From positions 174,476-238,475 of the IMG/VR virus record IMGVR_UViG_3300043425_001539: 64,000 bases of DNA; one strand, 5' to 3'. The translations under genes and the position numbers were made by a program. Below are positions 68 to 30,515 of the stretch, piece after piece. How positions within the stretch are numbered: the first letter of the stretch is position 1; every line of letters starts with the position of its first letter. The notes beneath the pieces were generated by a model, which saw only the letters and a list, made by a program, of their open reading frames with translations, did no database searches and had not been told where the DNA came from.

Positions 68-616
68 TTACCACAATCCATCAGAACTTTTAATATCCTT
101 GACTTTAGACAAATCCCAATCAAAATCTGAATGAACTTTAGATTTACTAAATATGCCTTTCATATATCTGACATTTCTAATATCCCAATTTCTTAGATTA
201 CCATCAAAAGGAGTATCATAAAACATAGATGCCATGTTGGTTACTTTACTAACATTCCACCCGCTAACGTCACCCTTAAAAGGTGTCCCTTCAAACATAC
301 CTTCCATGTTGGTTACATTGCTAACGTCCCATTCGCTAATGTCACCTTTAAAATCTGACCCATAAAACATGTAGGACATATTTTTTACATTACTAACATT
401 CCATTCGCTAATGTTGCCATTAAAAGGCATTTCTGCAAATAAGAATGACATGTCTTTAATTCGCGAAACATCAACATGACTTAAATCTGCATTAGGCCCA
501 AATTTAGCTATTTCATTTTCAATTATCGACTCTAAAGATTTCCGATCTATTGCATAAATAACTTTGTTTTGAGCAGCTTCGTTAAGAAACTGATCGAAAG
601 ATTTTAAATTTTTCAT
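68..616 (-). CDS. DUF285/BspA-like repeat protein with N-terminal capsid-targeting-like tag
   Basis: 22-aa repeats F(N/K)G(D/N)ISxW(D/N)VSNVxNMxxMF; N-terminus MKNLKSFDQFLNE; GPNADLSHVDVS cap. Confidence 0.85.
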   Translation of the reverse strand: MKNLKSFDQFLNEAAQNKVIYAIDRKSLESIIENEIAKFGPNADLSHVDVSRIKDMSFLFAEMPFNGNISEWNVSNVKNMSYMFYGSDFKGDISEWDVSNVTNMEGMFEGTPFKGDVSGWNVSKVTNMASMFYDTPFDGNLRNWDIRNVRYMKGIFSKSKVHSDFDWDLSKVKDIKSSDGLW

Positions 617-620
617 TTTT

Positions 621-1397
621 TTAAATTTTTATATGTTTCAGACCATACATTCTATCTACATTATCAGCCTTTGATAAATTCCATTGACTAATATCGCCTT
701 TAAACTTAGAGTCTAAGAACATTATAAATACATCTCTGACATTGCTAACGTCCCATTTGCTAATGTCGCCGTTAAATCGAGATTCTGCAAACATGTGCGT
801 CATATCTCTAACTTTGCTAACATTCCACTTGCTGATGTCACCGTTAAAAGTTGTCTTTTGAAACATGTGCGACATATCAATAACTTTGCTGACATCCCAC
901 TTGCTGATGTCGCCATTAAATTTAGACCCTTCAAACAATGATGACATCATTTCAACATTACTTACATCCCATTGACTAATGTCGCCGTTAAATTTAGAAT
1001 ATGCAAACATATCAGACATATCACGTACATTGCTTACATCCCACTTGCTAACATCGCCGTTAAACGAAGAATGACGAAACATTCCCCACACAGTGCGAGC
1101 ATTACTAACATTCCACTTGCTAACATCGCCGTTAAATTTTGAGAATGCAAATGTATCATTAAAATTAGTAACATTGCTTACATCCCACTTGCTAACGTCG
1201 CCGTTAAATTTTGTACCTGAAAAAGCGGCGCTTATATCGGTTAGACCTGAAACATCAATGTGATTTAAGTCAGCATTTGGTCCTAGCAATTGAATTTCTT
1301 TTAAAATAATTGGTTTTAATTCTTTTGCGTTCTTTGGGACAATAATTTCGCGTTCTGCTTCATTAAGAAACTGATCAAATGTTTTTAAATTTTTCAT
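621..1397 (-). CDS. DUF285/BspA-like repeat protein with N-terminal tag
   Basis: About 9 FNGDxSKWDVSNV repeats; MKNLKTFDQFLNE. Confidence 0.85.
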   Translation of the reverse strand: MKNLKTFDQFLNEAEREIIVPKNAKELKPIILKEIQLLGPNADLNHIDVSGLTDISAAFSGTKFNGDVSKWDVSNVTNFNDTFAFSKFNGDVSKWNVSNARTVWGMFRHSSFNGDVSKWDVSNVRDMSDMFAYSKFNGDISQWDVSNVEMMSSLFEGSKFNGDISKWDVSKVIDMSHMFQKTTFNGDISKWNVSKVRDMTHMFAESRFNGDISKWDVSNVRDVFIMFLDSKFKGDISQWNLSKADNVDRMYGLKHIKI

Positions 1398-1422
1398 TTA
1401 CTATGTTTTTTTTTATATATAT

Positions 1423-2262
1423 TTAGTTAAACAAATCTTCTTTAGACGTTACGTCTCGCAGATTTGTCAAATTCCACATATGAACACTTCTTTTAAATTT
1501 AGATCCTTGGAAGATACTTTCAATGTATTGCACTTGTCTTACGTCCCACTTACTAATGTCTTGATTAAATGATGAGCCATTAAACATAAAACTCATATTT
1601 TCTACATTGCTAACGTTCCATTTGCCGATGTTTTGATTAAATCGAGAGTCAGCAAACATCCATTGCATATCGGTAACATTTAATACATTCCAATTGCCGA
1701 TGTCTTGATTAAATTTCGATAACCTAAACATATATGACATATCAGTTACTCGTCTTACGTTCCACTTGCTGATGTCACCGTTAAATTGTGATTCCGTAAA
1801 CATTCCACGCATCAGCTCTACATTACTCACGTTCCAACCACTGATATCTCCTTTAAATTTGGAATCTTTGAACATATTAGACATATCAATGACATTACCA
1901 ACATCCCATTTGCTGATATCTTTATTGAACTCTGATCCTTCAAACATACCTGACATATCTTTTACTTTGCCAACATTCCACTTGCTGATGTCACTATTAA
2001 AATGAGAATACAAAAACATATTTTTCATAGAAGTAACATTGCTAACATCCCACTTGCTGATATTGCCTTTAAATTGTGACCCTTCAAACAAGGATACCAT
2101 GTTGGTAACTTGCGAAACGTCAATATGATTCAGATCTGCTTTAGGTCCAAGTCTAGCAATTTCGCTTTCTACTATATCCTTTAAAGTTTGTCGATCTTTA
2201 GCAATAATAGTTTCTTGTGTAGCTTCATTAAGAAAATGTTCAAAAGTTTTTAAATTTTTCAT
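1423..2262 (-). CDS. DUF285/BspA-like repeat protein with N-terminal tag
   Basis: About 10 repeats; MKNLKTFEHFLNE. Confidence 0.85.
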   Translation of the reverse strand: MKNLKTFEHFLNEATQETIIAKDRQTLKDIVESEIARLGPKADLNHIDVSQVTNMVSLFEGSQFKGNISKWDVSNVTSMKNMFLYSHFNSDISKWNVGKVKDMSGMFEGSEFNKDISKWDVGNVIDMSNMFKDSKFKGDISGWNVSNVELMRGMFTESQFNGDISKWNVRRVTDMSYMFRLSKFNQDIGNWNVLNVTDMQWMFADSRFNQNIGKWNVSNVENMSFMFNGSSFNQDISKWDVRQVQYIESIFQGSKFKRSVHMWNLTNLRDVTSKEDLFN

Positions 2263-2295: not shown

Positions 2296-2967
2296 TTATT
2301 TTTTTGCATATGAAGAGATTTTCCAATTTGAAGTATCCCCCTTGAAAGCTGAGTTATTAAACATGTCGGTCATATCCTCAACCTTACTAACATTCCACTT
2401 GCTGATATCTTGATTAAATTCTGAAGATTGAAACATTCCAGCCATATCATAAACATTACCTACATTCCATTTGCTGATGTCTTTGTTAAATCTTGAGTCT
2501 TGAAACATCCAAGACATATCAGTAACATTACTAACATTCCACTTGCTGATATCTTGATTAAATTCTGAATAAGCAAACATACCAGTCATAACTTTTACGT
2601 TGCTTACATTCCACCTGCTGATATCTTGATTAAATTCTGATGATGCAAACATATAGGCCATTAATCGAACATTCCGAACATTCCATCCTGAAATGTTACC
2701 ATTAAAGACTGACTCCTGAAACATATAGGACATGTTTTCAACTTGACTAACATCCCATTTACTTATGTTGCCGTTAAAATCTGAATTTTTAAACAACCCC
2801 GACATATCTTTAACTTTTGATACATCAATATGATTTAAATCCGCCGTAGAACCTTGTGTTTTGATTGCATCTTCAATTAGCTTTATTAAATCTGCTTTAT
2901 CTTTAGCAATAATTGTTGTGCCTGCTGCTTCATTAAGAAACTGCTCAAAGGTTTTAAAATTTTTCAT
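2296..2967 (-). CDS. DUF285/BspA-like repeat protein with N-terminal tag
   Basis: FNQDISKWNVSNV repeats; MKNFKTFEQFLNE. Confidence 0.85.
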   Translation of the reverse strand: MKNFKTFEQFLNEAAGTTIIAKDKADLIKLIEDAIKTQGSTADLNHIDVSKVKDMSGLFKNSDFNGNISKWDVSQVENMSYMFQESVFNGNISGWNVRNVRLMAYMFASSEFNQDISRWNVSNVKVMTGMFAYSEFNQDISKWNVSNVTDMSWMFQDSRFNKDISKWNVGNVYDMAGMFQSSEFNQDISKWNVSKVEDMTDMFNNSAFKGDTSNWKISSYAKK

Positions 2968-5036: not shown

Positions 5037-5056
5037 ATAAATAATTATTTAATTTG

Positions 5057-5846: not shown

Positions 5847-6218
5847 TTAGTCTTGAGTAAAATCTTCAATCTTGTCATTGAAAGAAGATTGTTGATATGA
5901 AGATAAATTCTTAATTTCATCGCGTTTTCTTGGAGTTAACTCAATTACAGTGTACCCCATTCGGTAATACTTCTTTTCTGCTGCTGTCAAATTTTTATTA
6001 CGGCGTTTTGCAACTTCTTTTAAAGCTTCTTTGTCATTACCTGTTTCCATAACATCGCCCCAAGTTCCTTTAACAAAAATTGGGTATGTTCTTTTAGTGC
6101 CAATTGAACCTCCGTAATAAACCAAAGCAAATTGGTCAGATAAATTTACTTCATTACCTTCGTTGAGAAATTCTTCCGATTCGTTGATAAAATTATCAAA
6201 GTTTTGAATATGTTTCAT
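5847..6218 (-). CDS. Putative internal head protein (tagged)
   Basis: MKHIQNFDNFINE-S followed by a second EEFLNE site. Confidence 0.65.
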   Translation of the reverse strand: MKHIQNFDNFINESEEFLNEGNEVNLSDQFALVYYGGSIGTKRTYPIFVKGTWGDVMETGNDKEALKEVAKRRNKNLTAAEKKYYRMGYTVIELTPRKRDEIKNLSSYQQSSFNDKIEDFTQD

Positions 6219-6230
6219 ATTTGTGTTTTT

Positions 6231-6845
6231 TTATCCTACAATTGAAAAACTTAATTGATTTTCAGAAACTACCAAATTATAAACTTTATTAAATAGAGTC
6301 TCAACCTCACGTTTAATATCTGATTCAAGCTGTGCCCTACTTTTTTGTGCAAAGTATTGTTTTAGAGATGCTTGTTTAAAAATATTTGCAGTACTCCGGT
6401 AATTGCGTGCGCTTCCTACAAATGAAACATTGACAGTTCTAGTTTTTGCCGAAGGTATATTACTGATTTGCATGTCTTTTCCCAACTTAGATTTCACCAA
6501 ATCATTGTTTGCATTTTGCATCACTGCATCAACAAATAGTTTCAATCCAGCTAAAAAATCGCCCATTTCGTTTGCATTAAAATACGGTCCGCTACCTTGA
6601 GAAACAATTGTGTATTTATCTCCCCAACCGCTTTCTGCTATGTCACTTGTTACTGCATCATACCTACCTGTGCTTATTTTGCTTGGAACGGCCATAACAG
6701 GTACTTTGCCTCCAGCATATTGGATGGTAGCAGAATACCTTAAATCGCCGTATTCACCTACTCTCCATTGTGGCTTTCCTCCTGTCAAAGAAGCCTCGTT
6801 AAGATTTTCATTGATAAAATTATCAAAATTTTGAATGTGTTTCAT
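6231..6845 (-). CDS. Putative internal head protein (tagged)
   Basis: First 13 aa (MKHIQNFDNFINE) identical to the neighbouring ORF; then LNE-A. Confidence 0.65.
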   Translation of the reverse strand: MKHIQNFDNFINENLNEASLTGGKPQWRVGEYGDLRYSATIQYAGGKVPVMAVPSKISTGRYDAVTSDIAESGWGDKYTIVSQGSGPYFNANEMGDFLAGLKLFVDAVMQNANNDLVKSKLGKDMQISNIPSAKTRTVNVSFVGSARNYRSTANIFKQASLKQYFAQKSRAQLESDIKREVETLFNKVYNLVVSENQLSFSIVG

Positions 6846-6859
6846 ACTTGTGTTTTTTT

Positions 6860-7474
6860 TTAATTATAAATTTTTGATTTATCAACAACTGTTGAAATTT
6901 GCCAATCCGATATATCTCCATTAAACTTTGAGTTCTTAAATATACCATTCATAGTCAAAACTCTTCCAACATCCCACTTGCTAACATCGCCATTAAACTT
7001 TGAATCCGCAAACAGCAATCTCATATCTTCAACATTTTTAGTATTCCATTTACTAACATCGCCATTAAACTCAGATCCTTCAAACATACTCTGCATATTT
7101 GCAACATTGCTTACATCCCATTTGCTAATGTCGCCATTAAACTTGGATCCTTCAAACATGCTTTTCATATTAGCAACATTGCCTACATTCCACTTGCTAA
7201 TGTCACCATTAAATTTCGAGAATGCAAACATGCCTTTCATATTGGCTACCTTTCCCACATTCCACTTGCTAATGTCACCATTAAAAGGTGAGTACATAAA
7301 CAAGTCAGACATATCAGTTATTTTGGATACATCTATGTGATTCAAATCAGCATTTGGTCCTTGCTCTGCTATTTCGGTTTTAACCAATTTTAAAAGCTCG
7401 GTTCGATTTGCAGGAACAACAGTTTCTTGTGTTGCTTCATTTATAAACTGTTCAAATGTTTTAACTGTTTTCAT
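6860..7474 (-). CDS. DUF285/BspA-like repeat protein with N-terminal tag
   Basis: FNGDISKWNVG repeats; MKTVKTFEQFINE; GPNADLNHIDVS cap. Confidence 0.85.
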   Translation of the reverse strand: MKTVKTFEQFINEATQETVVPANRTELLKLVKTEIAEQGPNADLNHIDVSKITDMSDLFMYSPFNGDISKWNVGKVANMKGMFAFSKFNGDISKWNVGNVANMKSMFEGSKFNGDISKWDVSNVANMQSMFEGSEFNGDVSKWNTKNVEDMRLLFADSKFNGDVSKWDVGRVLTMNGIFKNSKFNGDISDWQISTVVDKSKIYN

Positions 7475-7477: not shown

Positions 7478-7840
7478 TTATTTATATTTTAAATTTGAAA
7501 TTTCGTCAATTAAACCTCCTAAGTTATAGTCGCTTTGTCTTGAACCGCTAAAAAAATGATCTTGAATTTTTTTATTAGTCGCGGAAGAATATATGTTTTT
7601 GTCCCAATCAATTCGGTCTATTGTCATATAATATCCCACATCTTCACCGCTGCTAAATCCTTTTGCTGTATATTTTTTATTTGAATTAGGCCTATCATCT
7701 GTGATAGCATAAGTTACTTTCAAGTCAAGATTAAGTGGAACAGAAATACCATCAATTGTGTAATTATCCAATTTAATATTTATGGTATTTAATTCTTCAC
7801 TTTCATTTAAAAAAGTTTCAAACGTTTTAATTTTTTTCAT
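7478..7840 (-). CDS. Putative internal head protein (tagged)
   Basis: MKKIKTFETFLNE-S. Confidence 0.65.
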   Translation of the reverse strand: MKKIKTFETFLNESEELNTINIKLDNYTIDGISVPLNLDLKVTYAITDDRPNSNKKYTAKGFSSGEDVGYYMTIDRIDWDKNIYSSATNKKIQDHFFSGSRQSDYNLGGLIDEISNLKYK

Positions 7841-10837: not shown

Positions 10838-12670
10838 TTATTTTTTAAATGCCATATATTCCTCAAATTTCATAAATCTTTTTGGAACATTTTTATTTTC
10901 CTTTTTAATATCATCTTCATCATCTTTCTTTTCTTCCTCAGGCGCTTTTTCGTCATCTTTCTTTTCCTCCTCAGGTTTCTTTTCCTCAGGCGCTTTTTCG
11001 TCATCTTTCTTTTCCTCCTCGGGTTTCTTTTTATCTTCTTTATCTTCCTCGGGTTTTTTAACATCTGAAGTTTTTTCCTCAGGCTCTTTTTCTTCGCCAC
11101 CTAAATCTTTCAATTCTTGTATTGCATTTGTGATAGCTTCAGTGTCTTTTTCAGGCTCCAATTTAGGAAATTCTTTAAATGCTTTTGCTTCGTCGGGCAT
11201 TTCTTCATCCTCGCTTTCTATTCCTTTGTTAACCAATTCAACCATACGGTTGCGCAAATTAATTTGGTTTATCTTTGCTTGTTTAATTTTTTGTAAATCA
11301 GTGATTCCTTCGGTTGCAATTTTCTTTTTATCTTCGCCATCATAAGAATTAATACTTTTAAGTATAACACTTTTGATAGTACCTAAAGGGTCTTTTGATT
11401 CAGTTTCTTCGATAATTAAATTAATTGCCTCACTTAATTTAAAATTAATCATTCTGAATGAAGCAAAAGAAATTGATTCACTCATATTTTTTAATTCTTC
11501 TTTATAACCGTCAACCGTTTGTTTTGCTTTTTCTAAAGCATCACTAATTAATTTAGCTTTTTCTTCGTCGCCTGCTTCTTCAGCAGATTTTAACTCTTCT
11601 TCAGCTTTTTTAATTTTTTCTTCAGCTGACTCAATTCTATCTTTAAGTTCTTTGGTTTTTGAATCTTCAGTTTTTTCATCAGAAGATTTGTCAGATGTTT
11701 TATTTTGCTTGTCTTGAATAGCTTTTTCTATATCGACCCACTTTTTGTAAACTTCATTTGCTTTATTTGTGTACTCTGTGTATGCATCTTGCCATTGAGT
11801 AATTCCATACTTATTTAGAGATTCAATTTGTTTATTTGCTTTTTCAAATTGTTCATCAACATTTTCATCAACATTTTCATCATCTTTAACATCAGACAGC
11901 TTATTTTTTAATTCTTCAGATGTTTTTTTATCTCCCGTATCAGTTGCTATTTGAATTGCTTCTTCAAGAACCTCAATGTCAGCATTTCTTTTTGCTTCAG
12001 CAAATTCAAGATCCCATTTTTTCTTAAATGAACTTCCCAATATGTTGGATTGAAGTTCAATAAATTTTTCTTGTTTTTTTTCTATTTTTTCTTTTTCGGT
12101 TGTGTAATTATTTTCTGCCTTTTTCCACGCAACCTCTTTCATGTTTTCAGCTTTTTCCAATTCCTTTTTAGCATTTTCGGTATTACCTTTTGCCGCTGCT
12201 AATTTTTGATCTCGCTGTTTTCTTAACTGCTCTTGTTTTGCTGAGTTCCCTTCAGCTCGTTTAATCATTTCACGGTACTCGTCTTCAATTTGTGTTACAG
12301 CTGATTTATCTTCATCATCAGACGATGATTTGGTTTTTGCTTTAAGCGGCTCAATAACTTCAGTTTTATATTTATGATCAAATACATATTTTGATCTATC
12401 AGCGCTGGAATTTTTATAAGCTTCAATATATGGTTTTAATGAACTTTTTAATGACGTATAAATTGTTCTATTATACACAGACTTTGCAGCCAATAAAGCA
12501 ATGGATAACGTTCCTGCTGCTACTACATTTGCAACCGATTCCAATTCATTTCCTCCACCCCACGAAAATGGACCAATATCTAATCGAGTTGCCTCATCAC
12601 CTGAAAATTCATAAAGATGTTCATTGCTTTCAACAACAGTCTTTCTTTCAAGATAATCTTTAAACTTCAT
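10838..12670 (-). CDS. Large acidic/lysine-rich coiled-coil protein, putative head core or ejection protein
   Basis: Directly downstream of the MCP; MKFKDYLE start; one hydrophobic helix; KKPEEEKKDDEKAPEE repeats near the C-terminus. Confidence 0.5.
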   Translation of the reverse strand: MKFKDYLERKTVVESNEHLYEFSGDEATRLDIGPFSWGGGNELESVANVVAAGTLSIALLAAKSVYNRTIYTSLKSSLKPYIEAYKNSSADRSKYVFDHKYKTEVIEPLKAKTKSSSDDEDKSAVTQIEDEYREMIKRAEGNSAKQEQLRKQRDQKLAAAKGNTENAKKELEKAENMKEVAWKKAENNYTTEKEKIEKKQEKFIELQSNILGSSFKKKWDLEFAEAKRNADIEVLEEAIQIATDTGDKKTSEELKNKLSDVKDDENVDENVDEQFEKANKQIESLNKYGITQWQDAYTEYTNKANEVYKKWVDIEKAIQDKQNKTSDKSSDEKTEDSKTKELKDRIESAEEKIKKAEEELKSAEEAGDEEKAKLISDALEKAKQTVDGYKEELKNMSESISFASFRMINFKLSEAINLIIEETESKDPLGTIKSVILKSINSYDGEDKKKIATEGITDLQKIKQAKINQINLRNRMVELVNKGIESEDEEMPDEAKAFKEFPKLEPEKDTEAITNAIQELKDLGGEEKEPEEKTSDVKKPEEDKEDKKKPEEEKKDDEKAPEEKKPEEEKKDDEKAPEEEKKDDEDDIKKENKNVPKRFMKFEEYMAFKK

Positions 12671-12852: not shown

Positions 12853-14724
12853 TTAAGCAATAGTTGAAGAAGTAGATACTTGATCCCAGAAAGTACCGTT
12901 AAGATCTTTCAAGTTAATCAAGAATGTGAAGTATTGCGTTTGTGGGTGGAAACCAGCCTCAACAAGTGCATAACGAGATTTAACAGCAATTTTTGGTGCC
13001 ATTGTACCTTCTGCAATTGTTTGGATAGATTCAGCCATCAAGTATGGCATGAACTTAAGACCTGGCTCTTCATCAGCGCCTTTTCTACCAACAAGAATAC
13101 GAGTATCTTCGTACTTCATATTTGGATCAACATAAATCGTCATACCAGCGATCGTTCCCAATGGGTAAAGAGCGCCGTTATTTTGATTTACTGTGTTAGC
13201 CAATGGGTAGAAAGTAAACTGTGCAGAATCCTGAAGTGCTGTTGCAATTTGCAAGTTAGTCACTACAAAGTTACCTGGTCCACGACGGCCGCGTTGTGCA
13301 ACAACGTTTGCCGCAGCAAGAACTTTGGATTGGATTCTTCTTTGGAAAGTACCTTGGTTTTCAAAAGTAGTTGCAGAAGAAGTTCCGTATACTTGAACAT
13401 CTGGGCAAGGAATTGAAACCAATGAGTTTTCTTTACCAATGAAACGAGCATTACCAGTTGATGTTTGGTCAACAAGGGTAAGGTTAAGGTTAACACCGTC
13501 TACATTGTAGAAATCATAGTGGTTCTGCCAGCCAAGTGCAAATGCGCGAGACAAGATGTGTTTGTTGATTGACTGAGAAATCTCATTAACCAACGCATTT
13601 TCCATCATAGAAACAACATCGATACCGTACTGACGGTTAAGATCTTGAATTTGCTCAGTTGTTACAGTTGCAGCAACTTGGTAAGTTTCAGCTTCAACAA
13701 ATTTGGTGAAAGCTTGCAAGCCCATTGTTCTGTACTGAGTAGTTTCACCAACACCACGGCGCATTGGCTCGTAAGGAGTCAAACCGTTGGTTGCATCACC
13801 TGCAAAAGCATCGTTATCAAGAGGACCTGATCCAGCAAATCCTGCAATGTGATCTTCAAGAGCGCGAACCAATTCAGCAGAACCAGTGATATCTCCAGCA
13901 GCACCTACAATTGTCATTCCAGTTGTTGTGTAAGTGGAAGGATTAGTAAGAGCATTTCCAGAGTATGAAGTTGCAGAATACAATGTTGCAGCACCGTCCA
14001 ATACATCAGCAAGAGTAATACCTTGTGTATTTGCAGGAAGAGCATTGAATGTTTGAGCGCCTGTGCTTGTTACAGCAGTTGATTCGCCAAGAATACGGAA
14101 GATTTGCCCGCCGTCGATTCTTGATTTACCTACATAAGCAACAAGAAGTCCGTCGATGCCAGCACCTGCAGCAGCAGCGGTAAATACATAACCGTCACCA
14201 GCATTCGCAGTTGCAAGATCAGCAAGTGCAGTTGCGCCCAAGCCAGAACGAGAAATCTTGAATACCAAGAATTTATCAGTAAATCCTGTGTTGCCAGTCA
14301 AACCGTTTTGACCTTTGATACCAGGAGCATTTACATCACGTCCGCCAGCATATACATAATCAAGATATGTAAGAACACCCGCAGGGCCATTCATAGGAAT
14401 TACAGGAACGATATCGAAGCCAACTGTTCTAGCAGCAACCTGAATTGCCAACGGAAGTAAAGATGGGAATTTATCGCCAGATCCCAATGCATTTGCGCTG
14501 TAGAAGGCACCCGCACCGCCAGCAACTGTAGAAGCTGGAGCAACGTTACCCATACCTGGTGTATTTAAAAGTGATGCTTGTGGGTAAGCAAAACCTTCAT
14601 TGAGTGAATGGTAATGAGCATACTTACTCATCCATGTTAGTTTGTTTGATTCTTTAATACCCGTCTTTTCCTCAAGAATAGGGGCCCAAGTCTCAAACAC
14701 TTGTGATTCATTTAACAAGTTCAT
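12853..14724 (-). CDS. gp23: Major capsid protein, T4 gp23-like
   Basis: VIPMNGPAG, EISQSINKHIL, RRGPGNFVV, FMPY and PKIAVKSRYA motifs; long Ala/Gly/Thr-rich insertion. Confidence 0.9.
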   Translation of the reverse strand: MNLLNESQVFETWAPILEEKTGIKESNKLTWMSKYAHYHSLNEGFAYPQASLLNTPGMGNVAPASTVAGGAGAFYSANALGSGDKFPSLLPLAIQVAARTVGFDIVPVIPMNGPAGVLTYLDYVYAGGRDVNAPGIKGQNGLTGNTGFTDKFLVFKISRSGLGATALADLATANAGDGYVFTAAAAGAGIDGLLVAYVGKSRIDGGQIFRILGESTAVTSTGAQTFNALPANTQGITLADVLDGAATLYSATSYSGNALTNPSTYTTTGMTIVGAAGDITGSAELVRALEDHIAGFAGSGPLDNDAFAGDATNGLTPYEPMRRGVGETTQYRTMGLQAFTKFVEAETYQVAATVTTEQIQDLNRQYGIDVVSMMENALVNEISQSINKHILSRAFALGWQNHYDFYNVDGVNLNLTLVDQTSTGNARFIGKENSLVSIPCPDVQVYGTSSATTFENQGTFQRRIQSKVLAAANVVAQRGRRGPGNFVVTNLQIATALQDSAQFTFYPLANTVNQNNGALYPLGTIAGMTIYVDPNMKYEDTRILVGRKGADEEPGLKFMPYLMAESIQTIAEGTMAPKIAVKSRYALVEAGFHPQTQYFTFLINLKDLNGTFWDQVSTSSTIA

Positions 14725-17346: not shown

Positions 17347-18065
17347 TTTCTTATTTCCTTTTCTTTGTTTTTAAAATTATAATAATAATGCCCGTCCAAA
17401 TCTAGCAAACACCAGGGTTTATTTTTTCGATAGTCAAATGTAGGATCAGGAACATTCCACTCTTTTCCGTATAACTGTTCCAAATAACTTTCTACATCAG
17501 AAGGTATTTTAAATTTAACACCTTTGAATTGCATGGTATCAAGTTTTTGTATATACTTACTCTTTGTTCTGATGTACTGTTCGCGCCCGCCATATTTAAA
17601 CATATGATAATCTTCATGCGGAAAATATAAAAATATGTCACATGAAATTTCAATATCTTTAAATTTAACAACTTTATTGTTTTTCTTTAATACAAATTTA
17701 AGATTTCTTGATTTAACAAATTCATCATTTTCCAAATGATTTAATATATCTTCAGTATCATAAAACATTCTGTTTGGTACCGATAGTCTATCTTGTAAAT
17801 CTTGTATCAATTTAGGTGTTATGTCTTCAGCTAAAATACCAACATCACAATCACTGTCGCCGTCAATAAGAGCTTTATCTCGGTAAATACCAAGAAGAGT
17901 TCCACAATCAACCCAAAACTTGGCATTGTGTTTGTTAAAGATGGCAATTAAATCTTGTAAATTTTGAAATTGTAAATCCTTTAATTTTTGATAATCATCT
18001 TTGGACCAGCTATCTTTGCTGATATTTGCCTCGTTTAACCAATCTGTGTAATTTTTAATATTCAT
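17343..18065 (-). CDS. LicD-family nucleotidyl/phosphotransferase (tagged)
   Basis: WVDCGTLLGIYRD..GDSDCDV; IPSD..YL..YG..W..P; N-terminus MNIKNYTDWLNE-A. Confidence 0.82.
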   Translation of the reverse strand: MNIKNYTDWLNEANISKDSWSKDDYQKLKDLQFQNLQDLIAIFNKHNAKFWVDCGTLLGIYRDKALIDGDSDCDVGILAEDITPKLIQDLQDRLSVPNRMFYDTEDILNHLENDEFVKSRNLKFVLKKNNKVVKFKDIEISCDIFLYFPHEDYHMFKYGGREQYIRTKSKYIQKLDTMQFKGVKFKIPSDVESYLEQLYGKEWNVPDPTFDYRKNKPWCLLDLDGHYYYNFKNKEKEIRK

Positions 18066-18194: not shown

Positions 18195-18509
18195 TTACAA
18201 AGAAGTTGACACAACAGACTTCCTATCAGGCATTTGAAGGCTATCCTCGTTTGAATTTGAAAATGATACTTGTTTCAATCCATCCTCTGTGCTAAAATCC
18301 GCAATTTTTTTACCAGCGCTATTTTTAACAATCCCTGACATCATTTTTCCGTCAAAATAGCTAACTTCAATATTTTTCCCATTCTTAAGATAGCTTACAG
18401 TTGTTTTAAGCTTTTCCAATGCGCTTTGAATTTTTTGTACCAATACTGATTCTTGCATATTAGATTCATTTAAAAAGGATTCAAACGTTTGAATGTGCTT
18501 GTTTTTCAT
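18195..18509 (-). CDS. Putative internal head protein (tagged)
   Basis: MKNKHIQTFESFLNE-S. Confidence 0.6.
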   Translation of the reverse strand: MKNKHIQTFESFLNESNMQESVLVQKIQSALEKLKTTVSYLKNGKNIEVSYFDGKMMSGIVKNSAGKKIADFSTEDGLKQVSFSNSNEDSLQMPDRKSVVSTSL

Positions 18510-19098: not shown

Positions 19099-19102
19099 AA
19101 TA

Positions 19103-19195
19103 GTTGTTTTTAATTTATATACAAATATACAACTATTTGTTGAATAAAAAAAATTTTTGGGCAACTTTTTTTCTCAAAAAAGTGTTAAAATTTTT
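19103..19195 (-). promoter_or_regulatory. Early promoter cassette copy
   Basis: GTTGCCCAAAAATTTT..GTTGTATATTTGTATATAAATTAAAAACAAC. Confidence 0.8.
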
Positions 19196-22896: not shown

Positions 22897-23241
22897 CTAA
22901 ATAATTTTTTGTAAATGTTGTGGATGACATCTATATTCAATTGCATCAGTTCCTATACGCATATCAGAGTTTTCAATCTTCCAACGAATAGTTACGTCTT
23001 CAAATGCAACAATTGATCCTACTTGTCCATATGAACCTGAGTAAGGATCAACACACCTTACTTTATCTCCGATAGAAAAATTAGCCATTGACTGTGAATC
23101 ATCTAAATATTCATCATAACTATTATTAACAACGTTATGTCCTATGCTACCTACCTGTGCGTTTGGTTTTGCCCAAGCTGGCAAAACACCATTTCCTTGT
23201 ATTTGTTCAAACTCTTCAAAAAGTTTTATGTGTTGTTTCAT
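22897..23241 (-). CDS. Tagged protein with an SH3/KOW-like C-terminal domain
   Basis: MKQHIKLFEEFE; FSIGDKVRC..YGQVGSIV. Confidence 0.55.
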   Translation of the reverse strand: MKQHIKLFEEFEQIQGNGVLPAWAKPNAQVGSIGHNVVNNSYDEYLDDSQSMANFSIGDKVRCVDPYSGSYGQVGSIVAFEDVTIRWKIENSDMRIGTDAIEYRCHPQHLQKII

Positions 23242-23256: not shown

Positions 23257-23727
23257 TTATATCAATTTATTATTTGTATACGAATAGTCTAAATCATCTA
23301 TCTCATCTTTTAACTTTGCTATCTGATTTACTTTACTCGTATCTCCGTTTTCTTGATATTTAATTTGCAATGCCATTAAATCATTAAAGGCATTATGTAT
23401 TTTTACTCTATCTTTTGAGTTAACCGCAGCAATTATTTTATCACCCAATTTTTTGTCTATTTCTGGATGGTCATCAAGAATTTCTTCAATTGATGCTTTT
23501 CTCTTAGAAACTTTTTTATCAATTTTTTCTTCCTCCTCTTCCTTTTTCTTTTTTATTGCCTTCTTTTCCTTTTTAAAAGGATCTTCTTCATCGGATTTTG
23601 ATTTATCCTTTTTATCTGAATCATCAGATTTATCTTTGTTATCAGATTTTTCTTTATCTTTATTTAAAAAAGCCAACGGATCTTCTTCTGTAATAAAATC
23701 TTCAAACAATTTAATGTATTGTTTCAT
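23257..23727 (-). CDS. Tagged acidic/lysine-rich putative internal head protein
   Basis: MKQYIKLFEDFITE-E; GATATATA motif 4 nt upstream. Confidence 0.6.
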   Translation of the reverse strand: MKQYIKLFEDFITEEDPLAFLNKDKEKSDNKDKSDDSDKKDKSKSDEEDPFKKEKKAIKKKKEEEEEKIDKKVSKRKASIEEILDDHPEIDKKLGDKIIAAVNSKDRVKIHNAFNDLMALQIKYQENGDTSKVNQIAKLKDEIDDLDYSYTNNKLI

Positions 23728-24360: not shown

Positions 24361-24639
24361 TTACTTAATATCAATCTTGATATTATTAAATTGAATACTC
24401 TGTAAACCTGAATATTCTTTCTTTAATTTTGTAATATTTGCCTGATCTTGCAAAAGACCAACAATTAAGGATGTATCAATACTTTTTAATGTTCCATCCG
24501 AAGAAATGGTTAAAACGCCATTTTTATATGATACATCCTTAATTATATTTGAATTTGATAATATTCCTCCAATTAATTTCTCAAACTTTTCCCCACTTTC
24601 CGATTGTGATTCATTAAGAAATTCCAAAAATGATAACAT
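24361..24639 (-). CDS. Small tagged protein
   Basis: MLSFLEFLNE-S. Confidence 0.55.
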   Translation of the reverse strand: MLSFLEFLNESQSESGEKFEKLIGGILSNSNIIKDVSYKNGVLTISSDGTLKSIDTSLIVGLLQDQANITKLKKEYSGLQSIQFNNIKIDIK

Positions 24640-28096: not shown

Positions 28097-28453
28097 TTAA
28101 ACTTCACCAAATTCTTTAATCTTTTCAAACAATTCATCAAGAGTGTGATCACACTTAGCGTTTTTAAGTTTGTTTTGTTTGGCCTTTAACATTTGCAAGT
28201 TGCAAGGATGCGCAATATAAAACGGATTTATCTTGTCTTTAAATCCTTGTGAAATACTATACTTGTGATCCACATGATTAGCCTTCCAACCGCGCTTAAG
28301 ATTTTTGGGATTAATCTCGTTTTTAAATAATTCGTAATTTCTTTCGGTTAATGCTCTCACAAAAATCTGATAATCTTCACGGCTTTCAAACAATTCCTCG
28401 TAATTTTCGCGGTATGTTTCAAAATTTATCAAATTGGCATTTAACATGTTCAA
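28097..28453 (-). CDS. HNH-like endonuclease domain protein
   Basis: HVDHKYSI..HPCNLQML....N. Confidence 0.55.
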   Translation of the reverse strand: MNMLNANLINFETYRENYEELFESREDYQIFVRALTERNYELFKNEINPKNLKRGWKANHVDHKYSISQGFKDKINPFYIAHPCNLQMLKAKQNKLKNAKCDHTLDELFEKIKEFGEV

Positions 28454-28488
28454 AATGTATCTGTTATAAGCTATGCAATAACAGATGA

Positions 28489-29565
28489 TTATTTTAAGAG
28501 AGATTTGGCTAAAGCAACATACTCTTGAATGACTTTTCTCACCTTTTCAATGGTTTTAATTGCTTCGGGTGATTCAGCTTTATTAAACTTGGATGCATTA
28601 AACATCTTCATCATTTTTTCTTCGTATCTTGCAACAACTGCGCGATAAAATTCATCAGCTGATTTGTATTTAATGGTTGTTCCAAATTCGCCCAACTGTT
28701 CAAGTGTTTCACCTAAACCACGAATACCTTCACAAAGATCTTCAAACTTAGGACTGTTGGCATTCATACCTCGCCAATTTGCTAAGCGGGATGCAGGCTC
28801 ATATTTTTGTGATGTTCCTGATTGTTCCCAAAAGAATTTGCCAATATCACGGATAAAGTTTTGTGCATCCGCAGTTATAAGAATATCATCAACACCCGCT
28901 CTTTTGCTATACGGCGCCATCACTTGTCCGTTAAATTTGGCACGTACACCTCTTGCTTGAATTGAAATGTCAAGAACCTCACCTAATGATGAATAGAGAT
29001 TACCCAAGACAAATCCTTTAACATTTCGTATAGGTGTCATTCGGAAAAGTGTCCATTGAGTGTATTCTTGAGGTGTAACTACCAAATCCACTTGTACGTA
29101 TCCCACACCGCCGTTGCGCATTGCAACCTCCAATATCAATTTAAGTGACGCATCACTTGATACTGCTTGACTTTCCTCCAGGTCAACCTCTGGAATCTTA
29201 GCAGACTTCAACCAATCCATAAATTCAGAATTATACAATTTGGTAGAAGAGATTTCGTTGTTGCGTTCGTTGGCGTCCAATGCAAGAGTGGGATAACCTA
29301 CCAAATAGTCAACATCACCATATGTCTTGTCGGGTTGATTCTCTAAATCTTCGGTCCACCAAGTTCCACTTCCAATCGGGCGAACAAAATCCAGCGGCGG
29401 CAGACCAATACTGGCCAAATGCTGATTGAATCCTTTGGAGATTTTTTCCATAAGTTTAACCACTTCACCAATTACATCAGGTGTAATACTGGTGCCTTGC
29501 GTTTTGGTAGTGGCCCATCCGCCTTCAGCGATAAATTCTTCAAATAGTTTTATGTATAGTTTCAT
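28489..29565 (-). CDS. Pol-beta-fold nucleotidyltransferase (tagged)
   Basis: IGSG..YGDVD..VQVD catalytic pattern; N-terminus MKLYIKLFEEFIAE-G. Confidence 0.65.
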   Translation of the reverse strand: MKLYIKLFEEFIAEGGWATTKTQGTSITPDVIGEVVKLMEKISKGFNQHLASIGLPPLDFVRPIGSGTWWTEDLENQPDKTYGDVDYLVGYPTLALDANERNNEISSTKLYNSEFMDWLKSAKIPEVDLEESQAVSSDASLKLILEVAMRNGGVGYVQVDLVVTPQEYTQWTLFRMTPIRNVKGFVLGNLYSSLGEVLDISIQARGVRAKFNGQVMAPYSKRAGVDDILITADAQNFIRDIGKFFWEQSGTSQKYEPASRLANWRGMNANSPKFEDLCEGIRGLGETLEQLGEFGTTIKYKSADEFYRAVVARYEEKMMKMFNASKFNKAESPEAIKTIEKVRKVIQEYVALAKSLLK

Positions 29566-30515
29566 TGTATTAAATTGTTTTCAAATATAATATCCGCAAT
29601 CTTTCTTGACGCTCGTGTATCACTGGGATAATGAATTGCCGTTATCTCGCGACTGCGTGCAATCTTTTCCCCCAAGGCCTTGAGTTCATCCTGAAGCGCA
29701 GGATATTTTTGCGCATAATATCGACTCATAACCAATCCTGTAAGTGCATGTCCACTGGGATATGAAGCCGTCATTGCATCAGTTTGAATCAAGGGATAAA
29801 TAGGCATGTTATAGCATTTTGCCAATTGGTAAGGACGAGGACGATTAATCACGTCTTTCAGAAAGAACAGCAGACTATCGGTTTGACTGTCAATTCTAAA
29901 AAAGTCTCCCATACTCTCATCATACCCACCGGCTTTCAATAAGTCAATAAATGTTTGTGCCAAATTGCTTACATCATCAACGTAGCGCGCAAAAGTAATC
30001 TCATCAGCCGTCACTTCACTACAGAATTGTAACAATTCTTCCAAATCCGCGCGTGTTTCTCCGCTTGAATTGCGAGGCGCCTCGGCCCGCAACTTGTCAA
30101 CCCAACCCTGCGCAATAAACCAGTTTTTAATCCGGTCGTGGGTATGTTCTGCAATCTCTTGAAACTCTTGAGTCTGATTCCCGTAAACTACTCGATCCAC
30201 ATCCCAATTGTCAACATCAGTCAACTCCGCTTCGGCCAACAAGTCTTTCCGTCCCAATTGCCGATAAACCTCTTTCCGTGTCTTTTCCATTTTTTCTGCG
30301 TATTCCGGGTCTTCATTCCTGTTAAAAACAATTTGTTGCGTTAGACTTCCGCTGATCTTTTTGAGATCACTCTTGCGTGTTTTGATTAGCCAGGCAGCCA
30401 AATCCCGGATACTCAAATCCCGAAATCTTCCCTCTGCCTCAGGCGCATCACTGTCTCTCCATTTGGGACGTTTGGCTTCAGACAACCATTCTTGAAAACT
30501 TTTCATATCAATCAA
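29562..30515 (-). CDS. PAP2/vanadium-haloperoxidase-like phosphatase (tagged)
   Basis: K....RPRP, SYPSGH and SR....HYPSD motifs; N-terminus MKSFQEWLSE-A. Confidence 0.82.
   Translation of the reverse strand: MIDMKSFQEWLSEAKRPKWRDSDAPEAEGRFRDLSIRDLAAWLIKTRKSDLKKISGSLTQQIVFNRNEDPEYAEKMEKTRKEVYRQLGRKDLLAEAELTDVDNWDVDRVVYGNQTQEFQEIAEHTHDRIKNWFIAQGWVDKLRAEAPRNSSGETRADLEELLQFCSEVTADEITFARYVDDVSNLAQTFIDLLKAGGYDESMGDFFRIDSQTDSLLFFLKDVINRPRPYQLAKCYNMPIYPLIQTDAMTASYPSGHALTGLVMSRYYAQKYPALQDELKALGEKIARSREITAIHYPSDTRASRKIADIIFENNLIQ

What the first reader, a model, noticed from the sequence alone, without database searches (positions are those of the whole stretch)
68..30515. A shared N-terminal capsid-targeting-like tag on about 18 unrelated proteins: a modular injected payload
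Seen: otherwise unrelated ORFs begin with the same 10-15 aa motif, MKx(I/L)KxF(E/D)xF(L/I)xE followed usually by A, S or G. Examples: MKNLKSFDQFLNE (68), MKNLKTFDQFLNE (621), MKNLKTFEHFLNE (1423), MKNFKTFEQFLNE (2296), MKHIQNFDNFINE (5847, 6231), MKTVKTFEQFINE (6860), MKKIKTFETFLNE (7478), MDFKSFEEILE (SET), MKFKDYLE (10838), MNIKNYTDWLNE (LicD), MKNKHIQTFESFLNE (18195), KFIKLFEEFI (2H), MKQHIKLFEEFE (22897), MKQYIKLFEDFITE (23257), MLSFLEFLNE (24361), MKLYIKLFEEFIAE (28489) and MKSFQEWLSE (PAP2). The MCP starts MNLLNE-S and the protease-scaffold contains INE-S/LNE-S sites. I saw no such tag on early-region genes. Established: T4 internal proteins carry an N-terminal capsid-targeting sequence (IPIII MKTYQEFIAE) that gp21 removes at (I/L)xE sites. 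Inference: this phage has generalised the tag to load a large, enzyme-rich cargo into the head for delivery before any phage gene expression.
Basis: partly seen in the sequence, partly recalled or inferred. Interest (0 to 1): 0.9.

Follow-up and report, generated by a model that had tools for sequence, protein, structure and literature searches.

The report
T4-style capsid-targeting tag, expanded cargo
A roughly 238 kb uncultivated phage related to T4 puts the short N-terminal "pack me into the head, then cut me off" tag known from T4 internal proteins onto about 18 proteins of about 14 unrelated families, several of them enzymes, so it probably loads an unusually varied protein cargo into its capsid.

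Summary
On the minus strand of window 68-30515, 18 ORFs start with M-K-x-(I/L)-K-x-F-(E/D)-x-F-(L/I)-x-E followed by A/S/G, or a shortened form. Eleven are strong, three intermediate and four weak. Fourteen of 121 genes match a loose pattern in their first 20 residues, against 0.18 expected. No true tag occurs in about 80 genes of 30.5-64 kb or in 22 genes beyond the window start. Five tagged ORFs are DUF285 paralogs, so about 14 families are involved.

The tag fits the T4 capsid-targeting sequence (CTS). T4 IPII/IPIII start MKTYQEFIAE|A; the PAP2-like ORF here starts MKSFQEWLSE|A. Its four conserved positions are the ones T4 genetics assigns to targeting and processing. The locus encodes a gp21-family protease and a gp23-family capsid protein. 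In two cargo families the leader varies but ends at a fixed (L/I/V)-x-E site.

New here: the protease carries nine 14-residue repeats with the same signature. Cargo includes an Acb1-like phosphoesterase, a Pol-beta-fold nucleotidyltransferase, and SET, LicD and PAP2-like domains.

Packaging, cleavage and injection are inferred, not shown. Verdict: a new variant of a known mechanism.

The parts
68..616 (-). DUF285 (BspA-type leucine-rich repeat) protein, 182 aa, tag MKNLKSFDQFLNE|A (tag DNA 578-616)
   Evidence: Tag score 26.2 bits; Pfam DUF285 3.8e-49
621..1397 (-). DUF285 paralog, 258 aa, tag MKNLKTFDQFLNE|A
   Evidence: 29.6 bits; Pfam 4.7e-71; paralogy by BLASTP
1423..2262 (-). DUF285 paralog, 279 aa, tag MKNLKTFEHFLNE|A
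   Evidence: 29.8 bits; Pfam 4.4e-108
2296..2967 (-). DUF285 paralog, 223 aa, tag MKNFKTFEQFLNE|A
   Evidence: 30.1 bits; Pfam 1.2e-67. Homologs elsewhere carry signal peptides, short CTS-like leaders or neither
5847..6218 (-). Unknown 123-aa protein with a double site, MKHIQNFDNFINE|SEEFLNE|G
   Evidence: 32.4 bits; no Pfam or PHROG hit. Its 5' 53 nt are 92% identical to those of the next gene, although the gene bodies are unrelated
6231..6845 (-). Unknown 204-aa basic protein, MKHIQNFDNFINE|NLNE|A
   Evidence: 30.3 bits; pI 9.3
6860..7474 (-). DUF285 paralog, 204 aa, tag MKTVKTFEQFINE|A
   Evidence: 30.1 bits; Pfam 4.6e-54
7478..7840 (-). Unknown 120-aa protein, tag MKKIKTFETFLNE|S
   Evidence: 32.5 bits
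10345..10827 (-). SET-domain protein, 160 aa, short tag MDFKSFEEILE|S
   Evidence: Pfam SET 2.1e-15, domain starts at residue 43. Orthologs in L007 and L013 keep M-x-(D)FK-x-FE. Weak tag
10838..12670 (-). 610-aa E/K-rich protein directly downstream of the MCP; marginal tag MKFKDYLERKTVVE|S
   Evidence: Sequence; the syntenic ORFs in L007, L012 and L013 start MKFKQFL / MKFKQYLE. Membership uncertain
12853..14724 (-). Major capsid protein (T4 gp23 family). The N-terminal propeptide has consensus sites LNE6|S, IKE25|S and LNE43|G (DNA 14596-14724)
   Evidence: tblastn hits to Lak megaphages, other huge phages and T4-like phages. PDB matches to T4 gp23; query residue 87 aligns with residue 28 of the mature protein. 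Sites. Relatives start M..L(L/I)NE|(A/S)
14746..16590 (-). Prohead protease (residues 1-165) fused to a helical scaffold-like extension. Conserved (I/V)NE166|S and NE580|S sites
   Evidence: Pfam Peptidase_S77 2.7e-12 (47 bits, cut-off 27), phrog_207 7.4e-42, PDB 5JBL (T4 gp21) 1.9e-5. His72, Ser127 and Ser128 are invariant in 8 relatives
15427..15804 (-). Nine tandem 14-residue repeats, Y-x-(E/N)-Y-(L/V/I)-(A/G/S/T)-E-(K/H/N)..., at protease residues 263-388
   Evidence: 10 matches to Ar-x-x-Ar-[LIVM]-x-E against 0.16 expected; 4-8 matches in the proteases of relatives. AlphaFold predicts a continuous helix 246-368, at low confidence
17343..18065 (-). LicD-family protein, 240 aa, tag MNIKNYTDWLNE|A
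   Evidence: Pfam LicD 1.2e-12, domain starts at residue 44; 13.2 bits. Orthologs in L008 (MTMYNYEEWLAE|S) and L011 (MNNLKSYTEFLLE|S) keep the tag
18195..18509 (-). Unknown 104-aa protein, tag MKNKHIQTFESFLNE|S
   Evidence: 35.6 bits, the top score
22344..22895 (-). 2H phosphoesterase, Acb1-like, 183 aa, leader MQQKKFIKLFEEFIALFE|K
   Evidence: Pfam 2_5_RNA_ligase2 4e-7; Pfam Acb1 26.5 bits, just under the 27-bit cut-off. The family profile matches only Acb1 chains in the PDB (9q2g, 8.4e-5). Both H-x-T motifs are invariant. 86 of 94 homologs have [LIV]xE in the leader against 34 expected
22897..23241 (-). Unknown 114-aa protein, leader MKQHIKLFEEFE
   Evidence: 14.0 bits. LFE is the only [LI]xE site in the leader
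23257..23727 (-). Unknown 156-aa K/E/D-rich protein, tag MKQYIKLFEDFITE|E
   Evidence: 27.4 bits; sequence
24361..24639 (-). Unknown 92-aa protein, short tag MLSFLEFLNE|S
   Evidence: short variant
28489..29565 (-). Conserved Pol-beta-fold nucleotidyltransferase-like protein, 358 aa, tag MKLYIKLFEEFIAE|GGWATTKTQ
   Evidence: At least 159 homologs. P1 is E in 118 of 119 and P3 is L/I/V in 118 of 119; the leader is 12-19 aa in 115 of 119. AlphaFold pLDDT 90.8 with residues 1-15 below 50. Foldseek finds Pol lambda/beta, E 3e-5, TM 0.37-0.49
29562..30506 (-). PAP2-domain protein, 314 aa, no transmembrane-like segment, tag MKSFQEWLSE|A
   Evidence: Pfam PAP2 1.5e-7; hydropathy. The tag matches T4 IPII/IPIII MKTYQEFIAE|A at 6 of 11 positions, and the other 5 are conservative changes

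Best explanation
The shared N-terminus is a T4-type capsid-targeting sequence (CTS): a 10-18 residue amphipathic leader.

Proposed mechanism:
1. The leader's two aromatic residues (P7 and P4) dock a newly made protein into the prohead core.
2. Its (L/I)-x-E (P3 and P1) is then cut by the gp21-family prohead protease once the shell has closed.
3. The same protease trims the capsid protein N-terminus, cuts itself from its scaffold extension at (I/V)NE|S, and probably cuts the extension's nine 14-residue repeats. Each repeat carries the same Ar-x-x-Ar-(L/I/V)-x-E signature.
4. [quoted passage not shown]

The cargo comprises five DUF285 repeat proteins, an Acb1-like 2H phosphoesterase, a Pol-beta-fold nucleotidyltransferase, SET, LicD and PAP2-like proteins, and seven or eight small proteins of unknown function.

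What is shown:
- the motif, its restriction to N-termini and its enrichment over chance;
- the protease and capsid protein families;
- the conserved cleavage boundary in two cargo families;
- the flexible leader in a confident structure model;
- the repeats in the scaffold extension.

What is inferred: docking, cleavage, retention in the head and injection.
For: - The motif is N-terminal only and far above chance.
- T4 IPII and IPIII begin MKTYQEFIAE|A (read from NC_000866).
- T4 mutagenesis places targeting at residues 4 and 7 and processing at residues 8 and 10 (PMC9026906). These are the four conserved positions here.
- T4 gp21 cuts after E in I/LxE and has catalytic H85 and S140 (PMC12991175).
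- The window's protease is in Pfam S77, aligns to 5JBL, and keeps the His and Ser.
- The capsid protein is in the gp23 family and has three consensus sites in its first 43 residues.
- In 119 homologs of the 358-aa cargo the leader drifts, but P1 is E (118/119) and P3 is L/I/V (118/119), directly before an invariant GGW.
- In the 2H family 86 of 94 leaders have [LIV]xE (34 expected), and in 63 of these it lies 4-5 residues before the domain.
- In the AlphaFold model the leader is disordered on an otherwise confident fold.
- Pfam domains start at residues 34-44, which leaves room for tag plus linker.
- The tag is selective. Untagged enzymes lie in the same region: a methyltransferase, a Pol-beta nucleotidyltransferase, a helicase, a denV-like glycosylase and a 1118-aa glycosyltransferase. 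Early and metabolic genes are also untagged.
- Codons vary and the upstream DNA is not conserved.
- The same domains occur without the tag elsewhere: the 2H protein of Maribacter phage Molly, the PAP2 fusion in L027, and bacterial DUF285 proteins with signal peptides.
- Relatives carry the tag on different gene sets: 8 ORFs in 20 kb of L027, and 23 hits against 1.5 expected in 82 portal loci.
Against: - There are no proteomic or experimental data, and no cultured relative carries the cargo genes.
- Four of the 18 tags are weak, and two leaders (2H and the ORF at 22897) lack a clean (L/I)-x-E|(A/S/G) site in register.
- A scoring matrix built from the scaffold repeats does not rank the tags highly. 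Only FEEFIAEG reaches the top 5. The resemblance between tag and repeat is therefore in residue class, not residue identity.
- Mature cargo is not clearly depleted of [LI]xE sites.
- Late expression of the tagged genes could not be shown from promoter motifs.
- LicD and PAP2-type enzymes have no obvious role as injected proteins.
- The structure model of the scaffold region has low confidence.
Confidence: 0.75

Rival explanations
1. The leader is a prohead-protease propeptide, but the tagged proteins are assembly-core components or other protease substrates. They are degraded, or retained as structural parts, and are not delivered into the host as active effectors.
For: In T4, gp67, gp68 and gp22 also carry N-terminal (L/I)-x-E sites and are core proteins cut into fragments. 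Several tagged ORFs are small, charged and of unknown function, for example 23257-23727 and 10838-12670. Cargo shows no clear depletion of internal [LI]xE sites.
Against: Six families have folded enzyme or binding domains with conserved catalytic residues: the H-x-T pair, GSG..DxD, SET, LicD and PAP2. The cleavage site sits at a fixed position just before the domain, as in T4 internal proteins and Alt, which are injected.
Confidence: 0.15
2. The leader addresses proteins somewhere other than the capsid, or is recognised by another phage factor such as a chaperone, an unfoldase, or a membrane or pole-targeting system. Its likeness to the CTS is convergent.
For: It is a generic amphipathic helix. 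Related freshwater jumbo phages ('moraphages') encode ClpA-like and DnaK/DnaJ proteins (PMC12619734).
Against: This reading does not explain the invariant E at P1 and L/I/V at P3. It does not explain the match to the T4 positions mapped by genetics, the same signature at the capsid protein N-terminus and in the protease extension, or the clustering around the head module. The tag has no hydrophobic core.
Confidence: 0.05
3. The conservation acts on DNA or mRNA, as a translation-initiation region or a recombination cassette, and the peptide itself has no function.
For: The 5' 53 nt of the genes at 5847 and 6231 are 92% identical, including 13 nt upstream of the start, while the gene bodies are unrelated. 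Neighbouring genes share tag subtypes. This suggests that recombination at the tag does occur.
Against: Across families and relatives the peptide pattern persists through codon changes, substitutions and 1-3 residue indels, while the E|G boundary stays fixed. The upstream DNA is otherwise not conserved.
Confidence: 0.03
4. The motif is a chance product of an AT-rich genome whose proteins are rich in K, N, F, I and E.
For: The window has 29-38% GC in this region. Loosened patterns also pick up native helices, such as the ThyA N-terminus.
Against: 14 observed against 0.18 expected, with a maximum of 4 in 2000 shuffles. Only 3 internal matches occur in 16,625 residues. Scores are 26-36 bits against a 99.9th percentile of 6.9.
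Confidence: 0.01

Closest known systems
Capsid-targeting sequence (CTS) of T4 internal proteins IPI, IPII and IPIII, and of Alt (Mullaney & Black 1996; reviewed in PMC3012670 and PMC9026906)
   Same: A 10-19 residue N-terminal leader on otherwise unrelated proteins. Aromatic residues at the two positions that determine targeting. (L/I)-x-E followed by a small residue, removed by a gp21-family protease. Gp23-family capsid. The T4 sequence MKTYQEFIAE|A is close to MKSFQEWLSE|A and ..LFEEFIAE|G found here.
   Different: - The host is probably a member of the Bacteroidota, and the phage is a jumbo phage only distantly related to T4 (capsid protein about 30-45% identical to other huge phages, weaker to T4).
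- Most tags carry an extra basic N-terminal turn, M-K-x-(I/L)-K-x.
- About 18 tagged ORFs in about 14 families lie in one 30 kb stretch. T4 has three internal proteins, Alt and a few core proteins.
- The cargo includes recognisable enzyme folds rather than mainly small basic proteins.
- The protease is fused to a scaffold-like extension made of CTS-like repeats. T4 gp22 shows no such repeat.
Ejection and inner-body proteins of phiKZ, 201phi2-1 and SPN3US giant phages (PMC5694885, PMC7411985, PMC10052503)
   Same: A jumbo phage that packs many different proteins into the head. A prohead protease related to gp21 removes N-terminal propeptides after Glu.
   Different: In those phages the propeptides are mostly longer than 100 residues, the motif is (S/A/G)-x-E, and there is no shared short tag. 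Here the leader is 10-18 residues with L/I at P3. The Pfam S77 match (47 bits) is stronger than the S80 match (26 bits).
Polymorphic internal-protein loci of T-even phages, where diverse anti-restriction proteins share only the CTS (PMC3012670)
   Same: The tag is the only conserved part of varied cargo. There is evidence for cassette exchange at the tag DNA (92% identical 5' ends on unrelated genes).
   Different: The scale is larger. The tag also sits on families that are conserved core genes of the clade, such as the nucleotidyltransferase-like protein found in more than 119 contigs.
T4 Acb1 (gp57B), an anti-CBASS 2H phosphodiesterase
   Same: The tagged 2H family matches only Acb1 chains among solved structures and keeps both H-x-T motifs.
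   Different: T4 Acb1 is not known to be packaged (my own knowledge). It starts MMEFKDF and has no clear (L/I)-x-E leader. The family here has a leader with a positionally conserved cleavage site.
Chlorovirus vSET, a SET-domain methyltransferase carried in the virion (recalled from memory, not checked here)
   Same: A small viral SET-domain protein that may be delivered with the particle.
   Different: That is a eukaryotic virus with a different capsid lineage and no CTS.

Membership tests
T4-type capsid-targeting sequence (CTS) | Short (10-19 residue) leader at the extreme N-terminus of the precursor | tested here: met
   The tags start at residue 1 and the motif ends at residue 10-18. An in-frame stop lies 1-8 codons upstream of the Met. 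In 115 of 119 homologs of the 358-aa protein the leader is 12-19 aa.
T4-type capsid-targeting sequence (CTS) | Targeting determinants equivalent to IPIII residues 4 and 7 (aromatic, three residues apart) | tested here: met
   F/Y/W at P7 and F/W/I at P4 in 14 ORFs. The T4 positions are taken from PMC9026906 and the T4 sequence.
T4-type capsid-targeting sequence (CTS) | Processing determinants: L/I at P3 and E at P1, with a small residue at P1' | tested here: met
   (L/I)-x-E followed by A, S or G in most tags. P1 is E and P3 is L/I/V in 118 of 119 homologs. Exceptions: the leader of 22897 has only LFE, and 6231 has N at P1' followed by a second site.
T4-type capsid-targeting sequence (CTS) | A gp21-family (S77) prohead protease with catalytic His and Ser encoded by the same phage | tested here: met
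   Pfam PF03420 47 bits against a cut-off of 27; phrog_207 7.4e-42; PDB 5JBL 1.9e-5. H72 and S127/S128 are invariant.
T4-type capsid-targeting sequence (CTS) | The capsid protein and core proteins are processed at the same motif | tested here: inconclusive
   Consensus sites are present and conserved: MCP E6, E25 and E43; protease E166 and E580; nine repeats. Cleavage itself was not observed.
T4-type capsid-targeting sequence (CTS) | The tag is carried by otherwise unrelated proteins | tested here: met
   About 14 families after trimming the tag, with distinct Pfam domains.
T4-type capsid-targeting sequence (CTS) | Tagged proteins are present in the virion with the leader removed, and the tag is sufficient to package a foreign protein | not testable with these tools
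   This needs virion mass spectrometry and reporter fusions. No cultured phage in the collection carries the 358-aa cargo gene.
phiKZ-type giant-phage propeptides (S80 protease) | Long propeptides (often over 100 residues) cut at (S/A/G)-x-E | tested here: not met
   The leaders are 10-18 residues with L/I/V at P3. The S80 match (26.3 bits) is weaker than the S77 match. The description of the family is from PMC5694885.
Sec or lipoprotein signal peptide | A hydrophobic core of 10-15 residues after a basic N-terminus | tested here: not met
   No hydrophobic window lies in any tag. The tags are amphipathic and acidic. By contrast, 14 of 120 bacterial DUF285 homologs do have such cores.
Acb1 anti-CBASS 2H phosphodiesterase (for the ORF at 22344-22895) | 2H fold with two H-x-(T/S) motifs and membership of Pfam PF23474 | tested here: inconclusive
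   H56-x-T58 and H139-x-T141 are invariant. The profile matches only Acb1 chains in the PDB (8.4e-5). The window protein scores 26.5 bits against a cut-off of 27 in this scan. Precomputed annotation lists PF23474 for it and many homologs. Cleavage of cyclic oligonucleotides was not tested.

The most novel reading that the evidence does not exclude
The CTS is a single copy of the scaffold's own repeat. In this clade the protease drags a helical extension made of nine Ar-x-x-Ar-(L/I/V)-x-E units. Any protein that carries one such unit at its N-terminus would be co-assembled into the core and released by the same cut. That would identify the long-unknown docking partner of the T4 CTS. It would also explain how the tag works as a portable address label, one this lineage has used to pre-load a set of enzymes for the first moments of infection. 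The set includes an Acb1-like nuclease that could destroy CBASS signals before any phage gene is expressed.
Probability: 0.3. Interest if true: 0.8.

Novelty: new variant of a known kind. Interest (0 to 1): 0.65.

Why it matters
- **Reach of the CTS.** The T4 CTS would be an ancient address label used widely across T4-related phages, including jumbo phages that probably infect Bacteroidota, rather than a T-even peculiarity.
- **Predicting virion cargo from sequence.** This matters for uncultivated phages, where proteomics is impossible.
- **Candidate injected enzymes.** These are an Acb1-like phosphodiesterase, a nucleotidyltransferase, a SET methyltransferase and leucine-rich-repeat proteins. 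They bear on how large phages disarm host defences in the first seconds of infection.
- **A testable idea about the CTS partner.** The CTS-like repeats in the protease extension suggest what the CTS binds.
- **Practical use.** A short, well-defined tag family with natural sequence variation could broaden T4-style protein-packaging vectors.

Tried and rejected
1. **Late-promoter motif.** I looked for a shared motif upstream of the tagged genes, using T4-like TATAAATA variants and k-mer enrichment. There was no clean signal in this AT-rich DNA.
2. **Scoring matrix from the scaffold repeats.** Scanned over all proteins, it does not pick out the tags. Only FEEFIAEG ranks in the top 5. The likeness between tag and repeat is therefore claimed only at the level of residue class.
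3. **Depletion of cleavage sites in mature cargo.** No clear depletion was found. The observed/expected ratio for [LIV]xE[ASG] is 1.1 in cargo, 1.3 in untagged late-region proteins and 1.9 in early-region proteins, but the counts are too small to interpret.
4. **Finding this phage's portal neighbourhood.** One search with a single portal protein and one with a portal alignment did not return this contig. They did yield 82 loci of a broader clade, which I used to test how general the tag is.
5. **Cultured relatives.** There is no DNA match and no tblastn match to the 358-aa cargo gene. The 2H protein of Maribacter phage Molly is untagged.
6. **Homology between the 610-aa ORF after the MCP and the strongly tagged 370-390 aa ORF that follows the MCP in other lineages.** None was detected.
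7. **AlphaFold model of the protease-scaffold.** Helical, but low confidence (mean pLDDT 55), so it is only weak support.
8. **Pfam on the GC-richer, fragmented stretch at 31.9-36.7 kb.** No hits.
9. **The phiKZ-type propeptide model and the signal-peptide model.** Both were rejected on defining features (see the membership tests).

Full report
**Source and context.** The window is the last ~64 kb of a 238,475-bp IMG/VR contig. Nearly all convincing ORFs lie on the minus strand. The 623-aa protein at 12853-14724 is a T4 gp23-family major capsid protein (MCP). Its best matches in the phage collection are an uncultured 462 kb phage (45% identity), the Lak megaphages (39-43%) and Tenacibaculum phage pT24 (32%). 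It also matches T4 gp23 chains in the PDB. No cultured phage matches at the DNA level. The size, low GC content and apparent relationship fit the freshwater 'moraphage' jumbo phages predicted to infect Bacteroidota. The paper describing them does not mention N-terminal tags (PMC12619734).

**The observation.**
- A scoring matrix built from the tags gives 26-36 bits for eleven ORFs, always at residue 2-5. The 99.9th percentile over 17,778 positions is 6.9 bits. Three more ORFs score 13-15 bits and four are short or weak variants.
- A loose pattern occurs in the first 20 residues of 14 of 121 genes, against 0.18 expected from shuffling. It occurs only 3 times in 16,625 internal residues.
- An in-frame stop lies within 1-8 codons upstream of each strong tag.
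- For 2H and PAP2 the tag follows an internal Met that lies directly after the preceding gene's stop. For SET the start is taken from the tag position.
- After trimming the tag, only the five DUF285 ORFs are related to each other, which leaves about 14 families.
- Codons vary among families (Leu as CTT, TTA, TTG or CTA; Glu as GAA or GAG) and the upstream DNA is not conserved.
- No true tag occurs in about 80 genes of 30.5-64 kb; the one loose-pattern match there (58148-58444) lacks the rest of the tag. That region holds thymidylate synthase, DHFR, a HAD phosphatase, a metallophosphatase and a glucosaminidase. None occurs in 22 genes in the 20 kb beyond window position 1, which form a sugar-modification cluster.
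- Inside the tagged region, a methyltransferase, a Pol-beta-type nucleotidyltransferase, a helicase, a denV-like glycosylase, a thioredoxin and a 1118-aa glycosyltransferase are untagged. The tag is therefore selective and is not a property of the region as a whole.

**What the tagged proteins are.**
- Five DUF285 (BspA-type leucine-rich repeat) paralogs.
- A SET-domain protein.
- A LicD-family protein and a PAP2-domain protein without transmembrane-like segments.
- A 2H phosphoesterase. Its family profile matches only Acb1 anti-CBASS proteins among solved structures, and both H-x-T motifs are invariant.
- A 358-aa protein with invariant GSG..DxD..D motifs. Its confident AlphaFold model (pLDDT 90.8) resembles the polymerase lambda/beta nucleotidyltransferase fold (E 3e-5, TM 0.37-0.49).
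- The remainder are small proteins with no database match.
- Recognised domains begin at residues 34-44, which leaves room for the tag plus a linker.

**Comparison with T4.** I read the T4 sequences from NC_000866 rather than from memory.
- IPII and IPIII begin MKTYQEFIAE|A, and IPI begins MKTFKEF....
- The PAP2 tag MKSFQEWLSE|A differs from the IPII/IPIII leader only by conservative changes.
- A review of the T4 mutagenesis states that targeting depends mainly on residues 4 and 7 of the IPIII leader, and processing on residues 8 and 10 (PMC9026906). These are the aromatic, aromatic, L/I and E positions conserved here.
- T4 gp21 cuts after Glu in I/LxE motifs and uses H85 and S140 (PMC12991175).
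- The window's 614-aa protein at 14746-16590 matches Pfam Peptidase_S77 above the curated cut-off. It also matches phrog_207 (7e-42) and the T4 gp21 structure 5JBL. Its His72 and Ser127/128 are invariant in eight relatives.
- The T4 gp23 maturation site FGSFLTE65|A has the same Ar-x-x-Ar-L-x-E form.
- The MCP here has LNE6|S, IKE25|S and LNE43|G. Its residue 87 aligns with residue 28 of mature gp23, so a propeptide of about 43-60 residues is expected.
- The MCPs of relatives begin M..L(L/I)NE|(A/S).

**Evidence from relatives.**
- The 358-aa protein has at least 159 homologs at 50-81% identity. In 119 of them the leader varies in sequence, and by 1-3 residues in length. It nevertheless ends in E (118/119) with L/I/V at P3 (118/119), directly before an invariant GGW(A/S)T.KTQ. 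This is the pattern expected of a leader removed at a fixed site.
- In the 2H family, 86 of 94 leaders contain [LIV]xE against 34 expected. In 63 of these it lies 4-5 residues before the conserved domain start.
- LicD orthologs in two relatives keep the tag.
- A 261 kb relative has eight tagged ORFs in 20 kb. Its PAP2 homolog is instead fused to another domain and is untagged.
- The 2H protein of Maribacter phage Molly is untagged.
- Bacterial DUF285 proteins often carry signal peptides, while some phage-like ones have short MK..(Y/F)I.E leaders.
- In 82 portal-centred loci (~1 Mb) of a broader clade the tag occurs at 23 N-termini against 1.5 expected, usually on one to three proteins per head module.
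- Taken together, the tag is old and widespread. This phage stands out for its density of tagged genes.

The protease's C-terminal extension contains nine exactly periodic 14-residue repeats at residues 263-388, of the form Y-x-(E/N)-Y-(L/V/I)-(A/G/S/T)-E-(K/H/N).... That gives ten matches to Ar-x-x-Ar-[LIVM]-x-E against 0.16 expected, and relatives have 4-8 matches each. T4 gp22 has none. AlphaFold models the region as one long helix, but at low confidence. Conserved (I/V)NE|S sites flank the extension.

The tag and the repeats share a residue-class pattern but not exact residues. A matrix built from the repeats does not retrieve the tags. The safest reading is that both carry the protease's extended recognition signature. 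A bolder reading is that the tag imitates a scaffold repeat and is co-assembled with it. That remains a hypothesis.

**Weaknesses.**
- Nothing here shows packaging, cleavage or injection.
- Four tags are weak.
- Late expression could not be shown.
- Cargo is not clearly depleted of cleavage motifs.
- Some cargo, such as the LicD and PAP2-like proteins, has no obvious role after injection.
- Only 84 kb of the 238 kb genome was examined.

**Verdict.** The CTS interpretation is well supported by homology and by comparative evidence. The delivery step is inferred. The mechanism is known from T4, and a review already suggests that T4-like phages use the CTS to pack varied proteins. New here are the breadth of the cargo and its enzyme content, the presence of the tag in a distant jumbo-phage lineage, the tagged Acb1-like family, and the CTS-like repeats in the protease extension.

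Noticed in passing
window 19073-19225, 32650-32772, 34431-34553, 34953-35073, 35352-35474, 37815-37935, 38200-38322, 39075-39195, 41839-41991, 42672-42824, 52208-52360, 54465-54587, 54907-55059, 59674-59969: An intergenic repeat of about 120 nt occurs in at least 11 copies, and all but one lie in the 32-60 kb small-gene region. Several gene-upstream regions in the 32-55 kb stretch match a TTTG...TAnnTTTG pattern like the Bacteroidota -33/-7 promoter. These may be early promoters, which would fit a Bacteroidota host. When translated, the repeat gives the recurring spurious 'PKNFF..CIFVYKLK' ORF starts.
   Followed up: partly
window 8157-8534; L008 9926-10330, 10349-10765, 10765-12000, 14547-16856; L011 14609-15007, 15023-15721; L012 11745-12134: A second shared N-terminus, M(S/A)TLK(S/T)TIKLES(T)xLFPxPVxFT, heads proteins of very different lengths (125 to 769 aa) in this phage and its relatives. 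It may be a common anchor domain for head or tail appendages.
   Followed up: no
window 9054-9233: A 59-aa ORF between the Laminin_G_3-like gene and the next gene has a precomputed Pfam Hc1 (histone H1-like) hit and carries no tag. It could be a DNA-condensing protein in the head module.
   Followed up: no
window 6180-6232 and 6807-6859: The 5' ends of two adjacent genes with unrelated bodies are 92% identical over 53 nt, covering the tag and 13 nt upstream. This suggests recent duplication or cassette exchange at the tag, as at the T-even internal-protein loci.
   Followed up: partly
window 10883-11110: The C-terminus of the 610-aa protein after the MCP is a tandem array rich in P, E and K ((K)PEEEKKDDEKA), seen as DNA repeats with 15-33 nt spacing.
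   Followed up: no
window 37562-37837, 41122-41421, 54176-54460: A family of roughly 90-aa paralogs (MKN(V/K)K..RFG(N/D)..F.YTDI(V/L)KEV) lies in the early region. At least two copies (37562-37837 and 54176-54460) lie directly downstream of copies of the intergenic repeat. Their internal YTDI.KE is the main non-N-terminal match to the loose tag pattern.
   Followed up: no
window 30000-38000: This stretch has higher GC (40-44% against about 30%) and short, overlapping, fragmented ORFs with no Pfam hits. It also holds two tRNAs at 31653-31819. It might be foreign DNA, non-coding RNA or genes interrupted by stops. This was not resolved.
   Followed up: partly
window 61400-61521: Rfam reports a weak, 122-nt tRNA-like match (34.9 bits) that ARAGORN does not call. 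It may be an interrupted or atypical tRNA. Five ordinary tRNAs (Phe, Ser, Lys, Leu, Arg) are present.
   Followed up: no
window 24688-28044; L017 11980-20549; L109 11027-21002: A 1118-aa protein has GT4 and GT9 glycosyltransferase domains. Beyond the window start lies a cluster of more than 20 kb of sugar-nucleotide and transferase genes (cupin, cytidylyltransferase, PfkB kinase, DegT aminotransferase, acetyltransferase, methyltransferases, NTP-transferase, TOD1/MUCI70). A TROVE (Ro60-like) protein lies there too. This suggests extensive glycan modification of the virion, the DNA or the host surface.
   Followed up: no
window 22344-22895 and homologs P0121-P0240: Among 94 of the 120 listed homologs of the Acb1-like 2H family (274 in all, many on contigs of 200-376 kb), nearly all have an N-terminal leader with a cleavage-type site 4-5 residues before the domain. 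The literature search found no report of a virion-packaged Acb1.
   Followed up: partly
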